DNA of 64,000 nucleotides, taken from positions 3,829,586 to 3,893,585 of the forward strand of contig BDGG01000001.1 of assembly GCA_001949185.1 (NCBI GenBank), written 5' to 3'. The notes beneath the pieces are model-generated. The model was not told where the DNA came from and searched no databases. It saw nothing but the letters and a program-made list of their open reading frames with translations. The stretch is from Ramazzottius varieornatus (taxonomy: Eukaryota; Animalia; Tardigrada). Made by a program: the position numbers and the translations under genes. The first letter of the stretch is position 1. Each line of letters opens with the position of its first letter. Below are positions 58,281 through 64,000 of this stretch, piece after piece.

Positions 58281-61200
58281 ATGGCAACGTCAATGTCCGT
58301 CTTACTTGCCGTTGGTCTGTGGTTCGCCGTTATCAGGTCTTACTCCTGTAAGTCATCCGTACACGTATAATTCGATTTCCCGGTCGGACGCCGAAACATA
58401 TGATAACCGTGGAGATGTACAGTAAATTTTTTTCCAGGTGCAAAACACCGGTTCAAACGAACTTACAACGTCGATCCTTCATTTTCCATATGGCCCAACA
58501 AAAGCCGAATTTTATACTATTTAGACAGTGACTACAGTAAGTGCCGAATACCGAACGGACAAACGCTTCTGGATTTCCTTACCTTTAACGTTTTCATAGG
58601 TGACTCGGAAAGGAATCTCATCAAAGCCGGCATTACCCAGATTATGAGTCAACTTCAAGGCTGCATCAACTTTGTGGAAACCACGGCTTCGGACACGAAC
58701 TTCAAGATTAGAGTCACCCCGTTTGATGCCAACGGGTAGGTCCACGATTGAATTCGAGCTTCACTATTATAAATAAAAAAGTTGCTTGTTTCCTGAAAGC
58801 TGGGCTTGCTGATTACAGGACCTTACAAGACTTCTGCTGGTCATATCAAGGTCAGAGGAACTTCCTGAGAAATACGGGAGCACTTGAGCAACCACTGATC
58901 ATTACACGAGGACCCAATGGCTGCCTCGATGGTTCGCTGCATAACATCATGAAGTACTTCGCGATATGCCTAGGAAAGCGTAACGAACATCAAAGAGGCG
59001 ATCGAGACAAGTACATCACCGTTTACCAGCAGAATATCGTTGTTCAAGTAACACTGAAAAATTTGCCAATTATCAGTCTGTTTTATTTTACCATTGTTTT
59101 CGTTTTTGCTTAGAATGCGTACCGGCTGTACAACACCAGCGAAGCCGTGTGGACCCTCTTTCCGTACGACTTCTGTTCCATTACTCACAACAAGATGACC
59201 GACTACGCTGCACCGGGTACTTTAGCATTTACTCCAGTCTCCGGACCTCAAGCGGTTCCTTTCTTGAACCAGATCAGCTACTACGATTGTCGGGTCATCA
59301 GCATGGAGTACTCTTGTCCCGCTGCAGCCTGCAAACCGCATAAGTACACATTCAAAAAAGCCAAAACGCCTCTCGCTTACGAACTCCTACTAATCGTTAC
59401 TAAATGTTGTTCTGATTACAGTGGAATGCAATAAAGCAAGGCTGGATGCTGCTAACGGTAGAGGTACTGTTTCTCGATCCACATAGACTTTTTGAAGGGA
59501 CTTCCTGAAGAGACTTTACAGTACCGGAGTCTTTCCCATCACAGGTAAAATGTTTTGATGTTTGGCAGGTTCGACCACTCCGATATCGGGGGGAATGTCA
59601 GGCGCGACTCCTGGACGGACGAATGGTCCGGGTGGGTCCACCATGGCTTCCGGTTTCGCAGGCCCAACTCAGGCACCAGGTTCCGGTGGTTCCACAGCCG
59701 CACCGGGCTCGGGAGTGTCGACACCAAGTTCCGGAGGACTGACACCTTCTCCCGGCTCCGGTACTCCAGTCACTGCCGCTCCCGGATCCGCTACTCCGAT
59801 GGGCCCTTCTGGCTCGGGCACGTCGCAAGCGACCATGGCACCTGGTGGCGGTACAACATCCATGCCTCAGACACCTGCTGGAGCCACTCCGGGCCCCTTT
59901 CCAACTGCTGCCACCCCGTCGGCACCTGGTGCGACTACTGCTAACCCAGCCGCCACCACAATGGCTCCTGGCGCCACCACAGGTACCTTACTTTTTAGTG
60001 TTCTCTTTTGCTCGCTCATTATTTATTTTCTATTTTTATTCCTTCATCCTACTTTAAAGCTGCAGCTGCAGCTACTACCGTTGCTCTGGGCGTCACCACG
60101 GCATCCCCTGGCGCGACCCCGGGTACTGTGCTGCTTTGAACCTTCTCACCGTAAACGTCTCAGTTTTGTGTTCGTTTGCTAGTTTATGCGTCAATTACAG
60201 CTGCTTCTGGTGCAACCACCCCATCTCCCGGAGCTACTATCGCCACCGGCCCAACTGCAGCCACTTCCGCGAATACAGGATCGACAGCGACTCTGGGCAG
60301 CACGGCAACTGCCTTTCACCAGGCTCAGCCCAGCATTTTTACTGTATTAATCGTATAGATTCGGCTGTCTTGCAGCCACGGGAAGCACGGTGATAATAAC
60401 AAGTAGCACCACACCAATGTCCACAACGACGCCTGAATGTCCTGCTAACTGGTTCTGCACTAACCCACCTGACGAGTCGAGCTATCTCTATGGCCCGTAC
60501 AGGCCAAACCCGACCTTGTTGCTGACCAGAGGTGATATACCTCTTGTACGAAGGTCTTGCAAAGGTGTATTAATATCTTTTGGTAGGAAAGTGTATTCTG
60601 CAGTATAACATGAACTATCAGACCGGCAAACTCGATCCAGCGAATAGTCCGCAACTGATCACGTCATACTTTCCCGGTCCTGGTGGACCCACGGCGCCCT
60701 TCCCCCTCTCCATGAACTATATGACTCCGGACCCTGCTACCAACAATCAGACTTATATCCTCAACATGATTGGACCGGTAAGTCCTACCTTTTCATCATC
60801 GAGGTGGGAAGATGGGTACATGCGCCTGGCCCAAGTGTGGGCATGGAAAAAACTGTGGGCCGTGGAGCGAAAGCGGCACGGATCAGCTGAAGTCGACAAA
60901 TCAATTAAATCAGCGCCGCTGTCGCTCCGTGACCCACAGTTTTTTCCTTGCCCACATTTGGATGAGATGCGTGCGTTATTTTACTGTGCATTCATTCATC
61001 TTACAGTGGAGCCAAAAAGCTTTGAGCTGCAGCGTCAGCCCCGCCAAGCCGCCAGCCACTGCCCCCACTTGCCCGGAAGCTGCTGATGTCCAAGACATCA
61101 ATGTCCAAGGTAGCATATACAACGAAACAAGTCTTGGGAAACACGCGGTAGTCTTTATTGGACTGAAAGGTGATCCTCTCTTTTCTAGACATTACAAATC

Positions 61201-61578
61201 GCTTCAGCAGCGCTTCCTCGCAATTGAATTACGAGGATGGTCTAATTTATCAGTTTGTTGTTAACAAGCGTAAGTCTAATGGGCGTTTCGCATCCACAAG
61301 GAGACAGATTAGACTGTTGTTCTTGTAGCCTCGAGAAGGGAATCGGTCTCGAGAACACAGACTTCAGCGAGTCATATCAAAACACGACAGGGTTCTTGAG
61401 TGGCCAAAGCAAGATCTACCAGATGACAGCCATCCAGGTCCTGAACGATCCTGACGGTAACGACCCGCCTCTGATGACCGTTTTCGGTATTGGCACTGAC
61501 GGTAGCACTGGCTATGTCGGCTTCGGTCAGTTCTCCAAAGCGCATACGCACTACATAGGTATCAACATGCCTCTTTAA
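58281..61578 (+). CDS. Astacin-fold (M12A) pseudo-protease paralog 1: signal peptide, RFKR site, inactive astacin domain, G/S/T/P mucin linker and a C-terminal globular domain (hemopexin-like repeat); some junctions irregular
   Basis: Exons: 58281-58347, 58438-58536, 58600-58735, 58819-59047, 59114-59339, 59422-59457, 59569-59982, 60060-60122, 60201-?, 60377-60531, 60587-60777, 61007-61109, 61189-61269, ~61313-61578. AATAAA overlaps the stop. Astacin landmarks: WP..I.Y, CI.F, CWSY.G, GC, EHQRGDRDKYITV and PYDFCSI. Confidence 0.75.
60831..60961. repeat. Intronic imperfect inverted repeat (47-bp arms) in astacin-like paralog 1
   Basis: 60831-60877 versus 60915-60961; about 6 mismatches, several compatible with G-U pairing. 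Confidence 0.85.
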
Positions 61579-62230
61579 TAAATTCTTACTCGTAGTTCAC
61601 ATGCCCCTGTCGGGGGACCCGACTCAACCCTTATCTCCCGTTGCGGTTCGTACTTGTTGCAACATATGAAGTGTCCACAGAATGACATAACGAAATTCTA
61701 TACACAAGATTGTAATTGCAGTGGATACAGCAGCCAGTCCCTATGAAAGATGCCTTTTCGTCGGGTTGTTAGAAGTGCACATGGAGCTATACGATGTAGA
61801 CAGCGGTCTTTTTACTGAAAAGTCACAAATGCTCGCATTCCCTTTTTCGACCTGCCGATCGGGGGCATTTGTTAGACAGAATATCAAGAGTATTAAACTC
61901 ACACTGCCGACGTCCGGTCGACGTAGAATACCCAAGTACCGAATGTGAAGTTCAACTCTTCACATGCGCAACTTGCCGGTGAACACAATAACAAGTCAGC
62001 AGCTGGCATATTTTTAAAATCGCAAGGCGAACCTCAAATCGATTGCAGTCATTACCATTTTTTTCGGAATTCGCTCATGCAGCAAAGAGATTTCGACTGT
62101 CGAGCAGGACAGGACAGGAAATCGATATGGCACGCGTCTCTCAAACGAAGCTGGGGTTCTTTGTCAAGGGATAAGGCCCCTTCTTCTACTGTCTGCAAAC
62201 TCTTGGAACAATATCAAGTTCGCCATCGAT

Positions 62231-64000
62231 ATGACAGGAAGAACTTCATTGACCGTGTTTTGCTCGCTGATCGCATTACTCCATTCTTGCCGCGCACGAG
62301 GTGAGAGACTGAACGGTTGAAGTTTACCGCCCTTGTGATCTATGCTTACCGTTTCCCGGTTATGTGTCGCAGGAGGAAGAAACCATCTGCGGACGTACAA
62401 TGTGGACCCAACGTTCTCCCGATGGCCTGACCGCACCAATATCCTCTTTTATCTGGACTCTGCCTACAGTACGTTCTGTATGCTGTAGCTCCCTGGATTG
62501 CGCCATCTTGGTGTGATATTCCACATTATAGGTTTTACGGAGCAAAGCTACATTCGAACAGCTATCGCAACCTTTCAAACTCAGATGAAAGGTTGTCTGA
62601 CCTTCGTCGAAACCACCGCGTCGGACCCTCGATTCAAAGTTCACGTGACACCATATCTTTCCGGGTACTATCTTTGAGGCGCTGTATAACCTAAAGGCTT
62701 AGTGTGAATTCGCTACCATTTTTGTTTATTATTCCGCAGAGTTCTCCAGACATTCTGTTTCTCCTATCCCGGACAGTCAAACAATGCAGTCAACACCGGG
62801 GCCACGGAACAGTTGCTGATCGTTACTCGTGGACAATATGGCTGCTTGGACGGGTCGCTGCGCAGCATCATGAAACTATTCGCCATTCTTGTCGGCAAAC
62901 GCAACGAACACCAACGAGGTTAACGTAGCATTCTCAAACCGCTCAAAGCCACATCTGTGTCCAACTCTCGTTCTTTCAGGAGATCGTGAAACCTACATCA
63001 CTGTGTTTGACAGTAACATTATCGTCCCCGTAAGTCACCTGCATTTCGTTGCAATTCTAGCGGTTCGAAATCATTTTCTGCTTAGAACTCCTATCGGCTG
63101 TATAACACGAGTGAGGCTAGGTGGTTATTTCGTCCATACGACTACTGCTCAATTACGCATAATCAGCCCACCGACTACTCCGCATCGGGAACCCTAGCAT
63201 TCGCCATCAAGTCGGGACCTCCGGCCATCCCGAAGATCGACCAAATCAGTGACCAAGACTGCCAAATCATCAGCATGATTTACAACTGTGTCGTCGCGGA
63301 TTGTGATGCATGTAAGTTAGAAAACGTCGGCGCGAAGCGAAACCGTCAGTATCTCTTTGTACCGTTTCGTTTCAGTCGACTGCCTGGCCGCCAGGCAAAA
63401 CGCTTTGGGAATGGTTTCTTCCACACCGGCACCCACGATTGCTCCCACAACGACCAGAGTGCCACCCACCACCACAGCGCCACCACCGACAACCACGGCC
63501 ATACCAACCACAACTACCATGGCTCCAACTACTACCACCCTCGCACCAACAACAACTAACCCAACAACAAGGACTACACCTTTACCGACCACTACCACAC
63601 CTGCGCCCACTACCACCACGGTTCCACCAACTACCACCACGGTTCCACCAACTACCACCACGGTTCCACCAACTACCACCACGGTTCCACCAACTACCAC
63701 CACGGTTCCACCAACTACCACCACAATTCCACCAACTACCACCACGGTTCCACCAACTACCACCACGGTTCCACCAACTACCACCACAATTCCACCAACT
63801 ACCACCACGGTTCCACCAACTACCACCACAATTCCACCAACTACCACCACGGTTCCACCAACTACCACCACGGTTCCACCAACTACACCACGGTTTCACC
63901 AACTACCACCACAATTCCACCAACTACCACCACGGTACACCGACTACCACCACAATTCCACAACTACCACACGGTACCACGACTACACACGGCGGCACAA
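62231..64000 (+). CDS. Astacin-fold pseudo-protease paralog 2 with a TTTTVPP mucin repeat; 3' end beyond the window
   Basis: Exons: 62231-62300, 62373-62468, 62532-62664, 62740-62908, 62980-63029, 63086-63311, 63376-end. Colinear with paralog 1: RTYNVDP.FS.WP, GC..FVETTASD, GCLDGSL, GKRNEHQRGDR, YRLYNTSEA, PYDYCSITHN. Confidence 0.85.
63609..64000 (+). repeat. Coding tandem repeat with a 21-bp unit ACTACCACCACGGTTCCACCA / ...ACAATTCCACCA (TTTT[V/I]PP)
   Basis: More than 15 near-identical units that degrade with single-base indels toward the window end. Confidence 0.95.

What the first reader, a model, noticed from the sequence alone, without database searches (positions are those of the whole stretch)
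58281..64000. Tandem pair of catalytically dead astacin-mucins sharing a conserved replacement active-site motif
Established: astacins use HExxHxxGxxHExxRxDRD (three Zn-binding His plus a catalytic Glu) and the Met-turn SxMHY. Seen: at the aligned positions paralog 1 reads KYFAICLGKRNEHQRGDRD and YDFCSITHN, and paralog 2 reads KLFAILVGKRNEHQRGDRE and YDYCSITHN. All three His (to K, I, N), the Glu (to Y or L) and the Met-turn Met/Tyr (to T, N) are lost, while the structural E..R.DR, cysteines, signal peptide and intron phases are retained. The paralogs differ at many other positions yet keep the same substitutions. Inference: this is not random decay but a selected non-enzymatic astacin family on an O-glycosylated stalk, possibly a binding decoy, protease inhibitor, or cuticle, eggshell or peritrophic structural protein.
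Basis: partly seen in the sequence, partly recalled or inferred. Interest (0 to 1): 0.85.

Follow-up and report, generated by a model that had tools for sequence, protein, structure and literature searches.

The report
Tardigrade dead-astacin, mucin, hemopexin gene cluster
These are two of three tandem genes from a large tardigrade family of secreted proteins that keep the fold of astacin zinc proteases but have lost every zinc-binding and catalytic residue, and that carry a mucin-like linker and a hemopexin-like propeller, so they most likely bind rather than cut.

Summary
The window comes from Ramazzottius varieornatus (models RvY_01335 and RvY_01338).

- **Motifs.** A profile alignment to solved astacins maps Lys, Tyr/Leu, Ile, Asn, Thr and Asn onto His92, Glu93, His96, His102, Met147 and Tyr149.
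- **Fold.** Whole database models pass the Pfam Astacin cut-off. The AlphaFold model of the third, adjacent paralog matches meprin, BMP1, hatching enzymes and astacin at Z about 21.
- **Selection.** Synonymous sites between the paralogs are saturated (pS 0.76-0.87) while pN is 0.23-0.37, and the frames stay open. This is not decay.

- It is a tandem triplet, not a pair.
- The genome holds about 34 loci without HExxH against about 18 loci with the intact motif.
- All named relatives come from three eutardigrade genera.
- Paralog 1 has an AT where its fifth splice donor should read GT.
- Paralog 2 runs into an assembly gap.

No RNA evidence could be obtained. I found no paper describing astacin pseudoproteases. 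Other first readers of this scan noted the same family elsewhere in this genome.

The parts
58281..58347 (+). Paralog 1 (RvY_01335) exon 1: start codon and hydrophobic signal-peptide-like N-terminus MATSMSVLLAVGLWFAVIRSYS; phase-1 donor GTAAGT.
   Evidence: Reading. Identical to the N-terminus of database models P0001/P0074.
58438..58536 (+). Paralog 1 exon 2: short leftover pro-segment AKHRFKR, then the predicted mature N-terminus TYNVDPSFSIWP...
   Evidence: In the model of paralog 3, the Thr after the Arg aligns with residue 1 of mature astacin and HCE-1.
58600..58735 (+). Paralog 1 exon 3, astacin-fold N-terminal subdomain.
   Evidence: part of P0074, which scores 44.9 bits on PF01400.
58819..59047 (+). 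Paralog 1 exon 4, holding the dead active-site helix. KYFAICLGKRNEHQRGDRD lies at 58952-59008.
   Evidence: Pfam Astacin 21.6 bits, E 1.9e-4, for the exon alone; residue mapping.
59114..59339 (+). Paralog 1 exon 5, C-terminal subdomain with the altered Met-turn YDFCSITHN (59165-59191). The donor at 59340 reads AT, not GT.
59422..60122 (+). Paralog 1 linker exons 59422-59463, 59569-59982 and 60060-60122, all phase 1-1. The main exon is Gly/Thr/Pro/Ala/Ser-rich (21/19/17/16/14 %).
   Evidence: Canonical GT-AG junctions that keep the frame.
60201..60278 (+). Possible cassette or decayed linker exon of paralog 1. The frame is open, but the expected donor reads GA. A canonical path skips it (donor 60123 to acceptor 60375).
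60376..61669 (+). Paralog 1 hemopexin-like C-terminal domain. Exons 60376-60531, 60587-60777, 61007-61109, 61189-61269, 61313-61558 and 61596-61669; stop TGA at 61667-61669.
   Evidence: Exons are collinear with residues 290-516 of H. exemplaris P0010 (44-72 % identity). That region models as a four-bladed propeller and hits hemopexin-fold structures. It also matches Hemopexin clusters in the ESM Atlas.
60831..60961 (.). MITE-like inverted repeat inside an intron of paralog 1 (53-nt arms, 85 % complementary). Not part of the protein.
   Evidence: at least 40 dispersed copies in the genome.
62231..62300 (+). Paralog 2 (RvY_01338) exon 1: start codon and signal-peptide-like MTGRTSLTVFCSLIALLHSCRAR.
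   Evidence: identical to database model P0004.
62373..62664 (+). Paralog 2 exons 2 (62373-62468) and 3 (62532-62664).
62740..63029 (+). Paralog 2 exons 4 (62740-62918) and 5 (62980-63029). The dead active-site motif KLFAILVGKRNEHQRG|DRE is split by an extra phase-1 intron.
63086..63311 (+). Paralog 2 exon 6 with the altered Met-turn YDYCSITHN (63137-63163); donor t|GTAAGT.
   Evidence: Pfam Astacin 21.7 bits, E 1.8e-4, for the exon alone.
63376..64000 (+). Paralog 2 mucin-like exon: 49 % Thr and 25 % Pro, with about 18 copies of a 21-bp unit encoding TTTTVPP. Sequence degrades from about 63880 and runs into an N gap.
   Evidence: TRF period 21, 17.9 copies, 90 % matches; composition; gap and the hemopexin-like exons beyond it.

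Best explanation
The stretch holds two members of a tandem triplet from a eutardigrade family of secreted astacin-fold pseudoproteases.

**Layout of each gene.**
- A signal peptide.
- A 7-10-residue remnant of the pro-segment that ends in Arg. No aspartate-switch propeptide is present.
- A roughly 215-residue domain with the complete astacin fold.
- A Thr/Pro/Gly/Ser-rich hinge of variable length, probably O-glycosylated.
- A four-bladed hemopexin-like beta-propeller.

**Shown.**
- The fold and the homology to astacins.
- Loss of all canonical zinc and catalytic residues: His92 to Lys/Arg, Glu93 to an aromatic or aliphatic residue, His96 to Ile/Val/Leu, His102 to Asn, Tyr149 to Asn, Met147 to Thr.
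- Purifying selection, and conservation in three genera.
- The dead form outnumbers the live form in this genome.

**Inferred.**
- The protein cannot hold the catalytic zinc and is not a peptidase.
- The astacin cleft and the propeller act as two binding modules held apart by a glycosylated spacer.
- Its likeliest role is an extracellular adaptor or decoy in the cuticle, eggshell, moulting fluid or matrix, where live astacins act. It would bind their substrates or regulators without cutting.
- Paralog 1 may currently yield only the astacin-like part, because of its AT splice donor.
For: **Identity.** The window is R. varieornatus; the models are GAU88686/7 (RvY_01335) and GAU88693 (RvY_01338), and the neighbour is GAU88695 (RvY_01340).

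**Homology.**
- PF01400 scores 44.9 bits for the paralog 1 model and 46 bits, over the full profile, for paralog 3.
- Single window exons score 21.6 and 21.7 bits.
- The family profile hits HCE-1 at 1.6e-19, and the key columns are substituted.

**Fold.**
- In the paralog 3 model, residues 40-270 have pLDDT 94-98.
- That model matches meprin beta, BMP1, TLL1, HCE-1, ZHE1 and astacin at Z 20-21, rmsd 2.3-2.7 A over about 190 residues. MMPs reach only Z about 10.
- H. exemplaris relative P0010 models at pLDDT 80.6 with two domains.
- Foldseek matches astacins at TM 0.77-0.80. It also matches hemopexin-fold proteins 6ix1, 3oyo and 7rj9 and full-length MMP-1.
- All 30 named nearest ESM Atlas clusters for residues 288-552 are Hemopexin.
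- The window's C-terminal exons are collinear with that domain.

**Selection.**
- pS is 0.76-0.87 and pN 0.23-0.37.
- P2 against P3 gives pN/pS 0.28 (bootstrap 0.22-0.35).
- Third-position identity is 0.41 against 0.77 at positions 1 and 2.

**Family.**
- About 34 loci lack HExxH and 18 carry HExxHxxGxxH.
- Only 73 hits turn up in 1.84 billion representatives, and 70 lack HExxH.
- Every named member is from R. varieornatus, H. exemplaris or P. metropolitanus.
- The cluster's subclade holds members of all three genera.
Against:
- Zinc binding and activity are inferred from sequence only. A non-canonical metal site cannot be excluded by computation.
- Paralog 1 has a G-to-A change at +1 of the ancestral donor after exon 5. 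The nearest GT, 4 nt downstream, shifts the frame to a stop after four codons.
- The hemopexin-like domain has no Pfam hit. Its assignment rests on predicted structure and language-model similarity of an orthologue 44-72 % identical to the window exons.
- O-glycosylation is inferred from composition.
- The proposed binding or decoy role has no direct support.
Confidence: 0.75

Rival explanations
1. The genes are decaying pseudogenes of former astacin proteases. The shared substitutions were simply inherited from one dead ancestor.
For: - Paralog 1 has an AT in place of the GT donor after exon 5 and a linker exon whose donor reads GA.
- The public gene models are all truncated or frameshifted.
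- No RNA evidence was obtained.
Against: - Synonymous sites are saturated, yet every astacin and hemopexin exon of the three copies is open and pN/pS is at most 0.28-0.43.
- The motif is conserved in about 34 loci and in three genera.
- Asn in place of His102 and Thr in place of Met147 are nearly invariant.
- The model of paralog 3 is very confident.
- The broken public models can be explained by hard-to-predict linker exons and an assembly gap.
Confidence: 0.07
2. Paralog 1 alone is a recently disabled or truncated copy. The G-to-A donor change forces intron retention or use of a cryptic GT. The product would then be only a secreted dead-astacin domain of about 265 residues, and the linker and propeller exons downstream would be untranslated relics.
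For: - The homologous donor is GT in paralogs 2 and 3 and AT in paralog 1.
- The only frame-keeping GT-AG alternatives delete the conserved C-terminal cysteines.
- By their numbering, the annotators' models RvY_01335, 01336 and 01337 appear to split this locus. This is an inference from numbering only.
Against: - The downstream hemopexin exons are intact and conserved, so any lesion is recent.
- A single-base assembly error or strain polymorphism is equally possible.
- Rare AT-AG splicing cannot be excluded.
Confidence: 0.3
3. The proteins are still hydrolases or metal-binding proteins that use a rebuilt site, for example the conserved Lys/Arg, Asn, Glu and His of K....LGKRNEH.
For: - The replacement residues are themselves conserved: K/R in 79 of 101 motif variants, N in 65 and E in 79.
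- His of the Met-turn (SITHN) and His after the family Glu (NEH) are kept.
Against: - All three metzincin zinc ligands, the general-base Glu and the Tyr switch are gone.
- I know of no metzincin that works without them.
- The aspartate-switch propeptide that keeps live astacins latent is absent, which fits a protein with nothing to keep latent.
Confidence: 0.05
4. The main role is structural. These are gel- or matrix-forming mucin-type glycoproteins of the cuticle, eggshell or gut lining, in which the two folded domains serve only as anchoring or cross-linking ends.
For: - Long hinges that vary in length, with 49 % Thr and 25 % Pro, and a 21-bp tandem array too long to be assembled.
- Relatives named 'mucin-2-like', with two dead-astacin domains and very long Ser/Thr tracts.
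Against: - Close relatives in H. exemplaris and P. metropolitanus have hinges of only 20-40 residues (P0009, P0010).
- The folded domains, not the hinge, are therefore the conserved part.
- This reading overlaps with the best explanation rather than excluding it.
Confidence: 0.2

Closest known systems
Astacin family metallopeptidases (MEROPS M12A, Pfam PF01400): astacin, BMP1/tolloid, meprins, hatching enzymes HCE-1/ZHE1
   Same: - Same fold (Z 20-21) and a significant HMM match.
- Conserved GC...G, the family Glu, RxDRD, YDYxSI.H and C-terminal cysteines.
- Secreted.
- The mature N-terminus is at the equivalent position.
   Different: - No HExxHxxGxxH, no catalytic Glu, Met-turn Met replaced by Thr, Tyr switch replaced by Asn.
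- No aspartate-switch propeptide.
- A C-terminal hemopexin-like domain. The word 'hemopexin' does not occur in the 2023 astacin review (PMC9848320).
Matrix metalloproteinases (M10A): catalytic domain, hinge, four-bladed hemopexin domain
   Same: Same overall layout: metzincin-fold domain, flexible hinge, hemopexin-type propeller. Full-length MMP-1 and MMP-13 are hit across both domains.
   Different: - The N-terminal domain is astacin-type, not MMP-type (Z about 21 against about 10).
- It is catalytically dead.
- The hinge is mucin-like.
- The layout is most simply convergent or the product of domain shuffling.
Pseudopeptidases of the ADAM branch (M12B): ADAM2, 7, 11, 18, 22, 23, 29, 32 and UNC-71
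   Same: Metzincin-fold domains that lost zinc ligands and the general base and work through protein-protein binding (review PMC11266112).
   Different: - Different subfamily and architecture.
- ADAM pseudopeptidases usually keep the Met-turn Met (same review), whereas here it is Thr.
- That review lists no astacin pseudopeptidase.
Substrate-binding pseudoenzymes of invertebrate extracellular biology, such as chitinase-like lectins and clip-domain serine protease homologues. This comparison is from my own knowledge.
   Same: Lineage-specific expansions of secreted enzyme folds that lost catalytic residues but are kept under selection as binders or regulators.
   Different: Unrelated folds. The analogy is functional only and was not tested here.

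Membership tests
Astacin family (M12A / PF01400) | Significant match to the family HMM | tested here: met
   - P0074 (paralog 1 model) scores 44.9 bits and P0005 (paralog 3) 46 bits, against a cut-off of 22.5.
- Single window exons score 21.6 and 21.7 bits, just under the cut-off.
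- The genome-wide exon scan with PF01400 did not list these loci at E<=0.001.
Astacin family (M12A / PF01400) | Astacin three-dimensional fold | tested here: met
   Predicted models only. Z 20-21, rmsd 2.3-2.7 A over about 190 residues to 4gwn, 3edh, 3vtg, 3lqb and 1ast; Foldseek TM 0.77-0.80.
Astacin family (M12A / PF01400) | Zinc-binding and catalytic motif HExxHxxGxxHE | tested here: not met
   KYFAICLGKRNE and KLFAILVGKRNE. The profile alignment maps K, Y/L, I and N onto His, Glu, His and His.
Astacin family (M12A / PF01400) | Met-turn SxMHY with the Tyr zinc ligand | tested here: not met
   SITHN in both genes: Met to Thr and Tyr to Asn. CSITHN is seen in 21 of 28 family Met-turns found.
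Astacin family (M12A / PF01400) | Propeptide with an aspartate switch that blocks the zinc | tested here: not met
   Only 7-10 residues lie between the hydrophobic N-terminus and the residue that aligns with residue 1 of mature astacin. No Asp-containing pro-segment is present.
Astacin family (M12A / PF01400) | Zinc-dependent endopeptidase activity | not testable with these tools
   Needs recombinant protein, metal analysis and activity assays.
Hemopexin-like repeat domain (PF00045) | Match to the Pfam Hemopexin HMM | tested here: not met
   No hit in full-length relatives or in the window's C-terminal exons.
Hemopexin-like repeat domain (PF00045) | Four-bladed beta-propeller closed by a disulfide between first and last blade | tested here: inconclusive
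   - The P0010 model shows four groups of strands between residues 300 and 520.
- It hits hemopexin-fold proteins 6ix1, 3oyo and 7rj9 at TM 0.54-0.59, and full-length MMPs.
- All 30 named nearest ESM Atlas clusters are Hemopexin at 0.90.
- Cysteines sit near the start and end of the domain in the window gene (CPANWFC ... RTCCNI).
- The disulfide itself was not checked, and the window's own domain was not folded.
Matrix metalloproteinases (M10A) | MMP-type catalytic domain with cysteine-switch propeptide | tested here: not met
   MMP catalytic domains score Z about 10 against about 21 for astacins. No PRCGxPD-type propeptide is present.
Mucin-type glycoprotein | Ser/Thr/Pro-rich tandem-repeat region | tested here: met
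   Paralog 2 has 49 % Thr and 25 % Pro, with a 21-bp unit in 17.9 copies. The main linker exon of paralog 1 is 19 % Thr, 17 % Pro and 14 % Ser.
Mucin-type glycoprotein | Dense O-glycosylation | not testable with these tools
   Needs glycoproteomics or lectin staining.

The most novel reading that the evidence does not exclude
Eutardigrades evolved and expanded a family of metal-free astacin-fold binding proteins that outnumber their live astacins. A conserved Lys/Arg and Asn take the place of the zinc ligands. The old substrate cleft, together with a hemopexin-like propeller, captures cuticle, eggshell or matrix proteins, or the regulators of live astacins. On this reading it would be the first astacin pseudoprotease system and an independent reinvention of the MMP layout, possibly tied to moulting, hatching or matrix protection in tardigrades.
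Probability: 0.3. Interest if true: 0.75.

Novelty: new variant of a known kind. Interest (0 to 1): 0.6.

Why it matters
**For the pseudoenzyme field.** Pseudoenzymes are well studied among ADAMs and carboxypeptidases. The 2024 review of pseudo-metallopeptidases (PMC11266112) lists none from the astacin branch. The 2023 astacin review (PMC9848320) mentions neither inactive members nor a hemopexin partner domain.

**What is new here.**
- A whole lineage-specific family, about 34 loci against about 18 live astacins in a 56-Mb genome.
- A fixed replacement motif, clear purifying selection and an MMP-like layout.
- This gives protease biochemists a natural test of what an astacin scaffold does without its metal.

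**For tardigrade biology.** It is a large, uncharacterised class of secreted proteins. It probably underlies two earlier, unexamined observations:
- the 'metallopeptidase' and 'hemopexin-like repeat' domain expansions (bioRxiv 10.1101/122309);
- the tardigrade-only Peptidase M12A orthogroups (PMC5531438, supplement file 20).

**For annotation.** UniProt labels such as 'Metalloendopeptidase' on these proteins are misleading, and the public gene models of this locus are truncated.

Tried and rejected
**RNA and context evidence.**
- Expression, splice junctions and the AT donor therefore remain unchecked.

- Searches were made exon by exon, by reference.
- The public models P0074, P0004 and P0005 and the orthologue P0010 served as proxies.
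- Scripts translated only across single junctions, to test frame continuity.

**Searches that gave little or nothing.**
- Exon 5 in the search for homologous proteins found nothing, because of the length window and word index.
- The hemopexin region of P0010 found only the H. exemplaris tandem pair.
- The Pfam Astacin scan of the whole genome did not list the window's genes. Single exons are too weak.
- Pfam gave nothing for the linker or the C-terminal exons.
- dN/dS proper could not be computed because pS exceeds 0.75; only pN/pS upper bounds are given.
- A bacterial promoter/terminator scan of an intron was irrelevant.
- Gene identifiers gave no paper and no hit in the Yoshida 2017 supplements.
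- Phrases such as 'inactive astacin' gave no paper.

**Readings considered and rejected.**
- A U12-type AT-AC intron for the odd donor: it reads ATAAGT...CAG, not ATATCC...AC.
- Membership in the MMP family: Z about 10 against about 21.

Full report
**Source and gene structure**

The window is G000:C1:3829586-3893585 of a 55.8-Mb, 200-contig genome. Exact look-ups identify it as Ramazzottius varieornatus. The 192/198-aa models GAU88686/7 (RvY_01335) are paralog 1. The 231-aa model GAU88693 (RvY_01338) is paralog 2. GAU88695 (RvY_01340) is a third copy just past the window end.

From the sequence and junction checks I read paralog 1 as follows:
- Astacin exons: 58281-58347, 58438-58536, 58600-58735, 58819-59047, 59114-59339.
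- Linker exons: 59422-59463, 59569-59982, 60060-60122, with a doubtful cassette at 60201-60278.
- C-terminal exons: 60376-60531, 60587-60777, 61007-61109, 61189-61269, 61313-61558, 61596-61669.

Paralog 2 reads as 62231-62300, 62373-62468, 62532-62664, 62740-62918, 62980-63029, 63086-63311, and 63376 onward. From 64001 the assembly has 2,033 N. The last 120 bases before the gap show indels in the 21-bp repeat, so those frame breaks are probably assembly noise. After the gap come the C-terminal exons of paralog 2, then paralog 3.

Searches were exon by exon, by reference, and public models served as proxies.

**The observation**

A 25-member family profile was searched against PDB sequences. 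It hits HCE-1 at E 1.6e-19 and ZHE1 at 3.7e-17. The printed alignment gives this mapping:

| Family residue | Astacin position |
|---|---|
| K | first His |
| y | catalytic Glu |
| i | second His |
| n | third His |
| E | family Glu |
| RgDRd | RSDRD |
| T | Met-turn Met |
| n | Tyr |

Intron positions and phases agree between the paralogs. Paralogs 2 and 3 have one additional phase-1 intron inside QRG|DRE.

**Homology and fold**

- Single window exons score 21.6 and 21.7 bits on PF01400, just under the 22.5-bit cut-off.
- Whole models pass clearly: 44.9 bits for paralog 1 and 46 bits over the full profile for paralog 3.
- The AlphaFold2 model of paralog 3 has pLDDT 94-98 over residues 40-270.
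- It aligns to meprin beta, BMP1, TLL1, HCE-1, ZHE1 and crayfish astacin at Z 20-21, rmsd 2.3-2.7 A over about 190 residues. MMP catalytic domains reach only Z about 10.
- Residue 34 of that model, the Thr after Arg33, aligns with residue 1 of mature astacin. The mature N-terminus is therefore probably made by cleavage after the Arg of RFKR|T, HLR|T and HHR|T. There is no room for an aspartate-switch propeptide.

**The missed C-terminal domain**

- The Hypsibius exemplaris relative P0010 (BV898_08324, 552 aa) models at mean pLDDT 80.6 with a second, all-beta domain of four strand groups.
- Foldseek hits hemopexin-fold proteins 6ix1, 3oyo and 7rj9, and full-length MMP-1 and MMP-13 across both domains.
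- All 30 named nearest ESM Atlas clusters for residues 288-552 are Hemopexin, at score 0.90.
- Pfam itself gives no Hemopexin hit.
- The window's C-terminal exons are collinear with P0010 residues 290-318, 323-387 and 457-516, at 72, 44 and 57 % identity.

The layout is therefore dead astacin, hinge, hemopexin-like propeller, which parallels MMPs.

**Selection**

- Nei-Gojobori counts were made exon by exon.
- For P1 against P2 and P3 they give pS 0.76-0.87, which is saturated.
- In the same comparisons pN is 0.26-0.28 in the astacin part and 0.33-0.37 in the propeller.
- P2 against P3 gives pS 0.79, pN 0.225 and pN/pS 0.28, with bootstrap range 0.22-0.35. Identity is 0.77 at codon positions 1 and 2 and 0.41 at position 3.
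- Because pS is saturated, these ratios are upper bounds.
- Open frames across more than ten exons per gene at this divergence exclude long-term neutral decay.

**Family size and range**

- A tblastn-type search of the genome with exon 4 finds 37 matches.
- Reading the loci shows the motif MK.....LG.RNEHQR.DRD, or close variants, throughout.
- Adding the PF01400 loci gives 18 loci with HExxHxxGxxH and about 34 without it, counting the three of this cluster. A few of the latter keep one His.
- An exhaustive HMMER search of 1.84 billion representatives finds only 73 proteins at E<=0.001. Seventy of them lack HExxH.
- The only two named proteins carrying an intact HExxH motif, from a sturgeon and a nematode, sit at the margin.
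- Every named member is from R. varieornatus, H. exemplaris or Paramacrobiotus metropolitanus.
- A quick ML tree puts P1, P2 and P3 with BV898_08323/08324 and a Paramacrobiotus protein in one weakly supported subclade. P2 and P3 are sisters there, with SH-aLRT 83.
- H. exemplaris also has a tandem pair.
- Variants include proteins with two dead-astacin domains and a dead-astacin-apyrase fusion.

**Open problem in paralog 1**

The donor homologous to t|GTAAGT (P2) and c|GTAAG (P3) reads c|ATAAGT. Splicing there would give ...CKP-L-ECNKARLD, matching the family consensus. The nearest GT, 4 nt downstream, shifts the frame to a stop after NGMQ. The other frame-keeping GT sites delete conserved cysteines.

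This may be a recent lesion, a base error or a rare AT-AG intron.

A linker exon at 60201-60278 has GA where a donor is expected. All linker exons are phase 1-1, so a canonical path (60123 to 60375) skips it.

**Mechanism**

Shown: fold, loss of the canonical metal and catalytic residues, selection, and secretory-type N-termini (the last by reading only).

Inferred:
- There is no zinc and no proteolysis.
- The retained cleft and the propeller are binding modules separated by a glycosylated spacer.
- The protein acts extracellularly as an adaptor or decoy in matrices where live astacins work. In nematodes, astacins process cuticle collagens and serve moulting and hatching; this is my own knowledge and is also covered in PMC9848320.
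- The conserved Lys/Arg at the first His position (79 of 101 motif variants) and Asn at the third (65 of 101) suggest a rebuilt, metal-free core. This is speculation.

**Literature**

- The 2024 pseudo-metallopeptidase review lists no astacin pseudopeptidase (PMC11266112).
- The 2023 astacin review does not contain the words 'inactive' or 'hemopexin', and cites only ordinary tardigrade astacins (PMC9848320).
- The Milnesium genome preprint notes hemopexin-like repeat and metallopeptidase domain expansions shared by three tardigrades (10.1101/122309).
- Yoshida et al. 2017 list tardigrade-only Peptidase M12A orthogroups in a supplement, and mention metalloproteinase families that respond to anhydrobiosis (PMC5531438).
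- Neither of those two papers discusses the dead active site.
- Phrase searches for inactive or pseudo-astacins found nothing.
- The library does not cover subscription journals or MEROPS. MEROPS, as far as I recall, lists non-peptidase homologues in M12A.

**Verdict**

It is a new variant of a known kind: a pseudo-metzincin of the astacin branch with an MMP-like layout. Other first readers of this scan flagged the same family elsewhere in this genome.

Noticed in passing
window 60831-60961: An intron of paralog 1 holds a MITE-like inverted repeat with 53-nt arms, 85 % complementary and 25 nt apart. The genome has at least 40 dispersed copies at 74-85 % identity.
   Followed up: partly
window 59340: The ancestral splice donor after exon 5 of paralog 1 reads AT instead of GT. 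Paralogs 2 and 3 have GT at the homologous site. It could be a lesion, a base error or a rare AT-AG intron.
   Followed up: partly
window 60201-60278: An open-frame linker exon whose expected donor reads CAG|GATCGA. All linker exons are phase 1-1, so it may be a skipped or decayed cassette.
   Followed up: partly
window 63880-64000 and L001 (2,033 N directly after the window end): The TTTTVPP-coding 21-bp array degrades into indels and then an assembly gap. The true length of the paralog 2 hinge is unknown.
   Followed up: partly
L001/L002 (G000:C1:3897200-3900500; window-equivalent 67640-70900): A third tandem paralog (RvY_01340) has the same dead motif (KYWAIVVGKRNEHQRGDRE, YDFCSITHN), a Thr-rich hinge and a hemopexin-like domain. 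The public model P0005 is out of frame after about residue 283.
   Followed up: yes
Public models P0001/P0074, P0004, P0005: All three R. varieornatus gene models of this cluster are truncated or frameshifted, through intron retention, wrong splicing or the gap. UniProt names such as 'Metalloendopeptidase' are misleading for these proteins.
   Followed up: yes
P0038 (H. exemplaris OQV14385.1); P0003 and P0006 (P. metropolitanus): Other family architectures exist: dead astacin fused to a full apyrase domain (PF06079, 317 bits), and proteins with two dead-astacin domains and very long Ser/Thr tracts ('mucin-2-like').
   Followed up: partly
L037, L041, L045, L049 (G000:C2:7525977, C4:90360, C3:940905, C5:1081283): Some astacin-like loci have intermediate motifs that keep only one of the three His, for example RQVLHLLGFHAELNRPDRD and RELMHVLGFNDEHLRSDRD. 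This suggests further, possibly independent, losses.
   Followed up: no
P0010/P0075 (H. exemplaris BV898_08324/08323, same contig): H. exemplaris also carries a tandem pair of this subfamily. The tree shows it as a species-specific duplication (SH-aLRT 100).
   Followed up: partly
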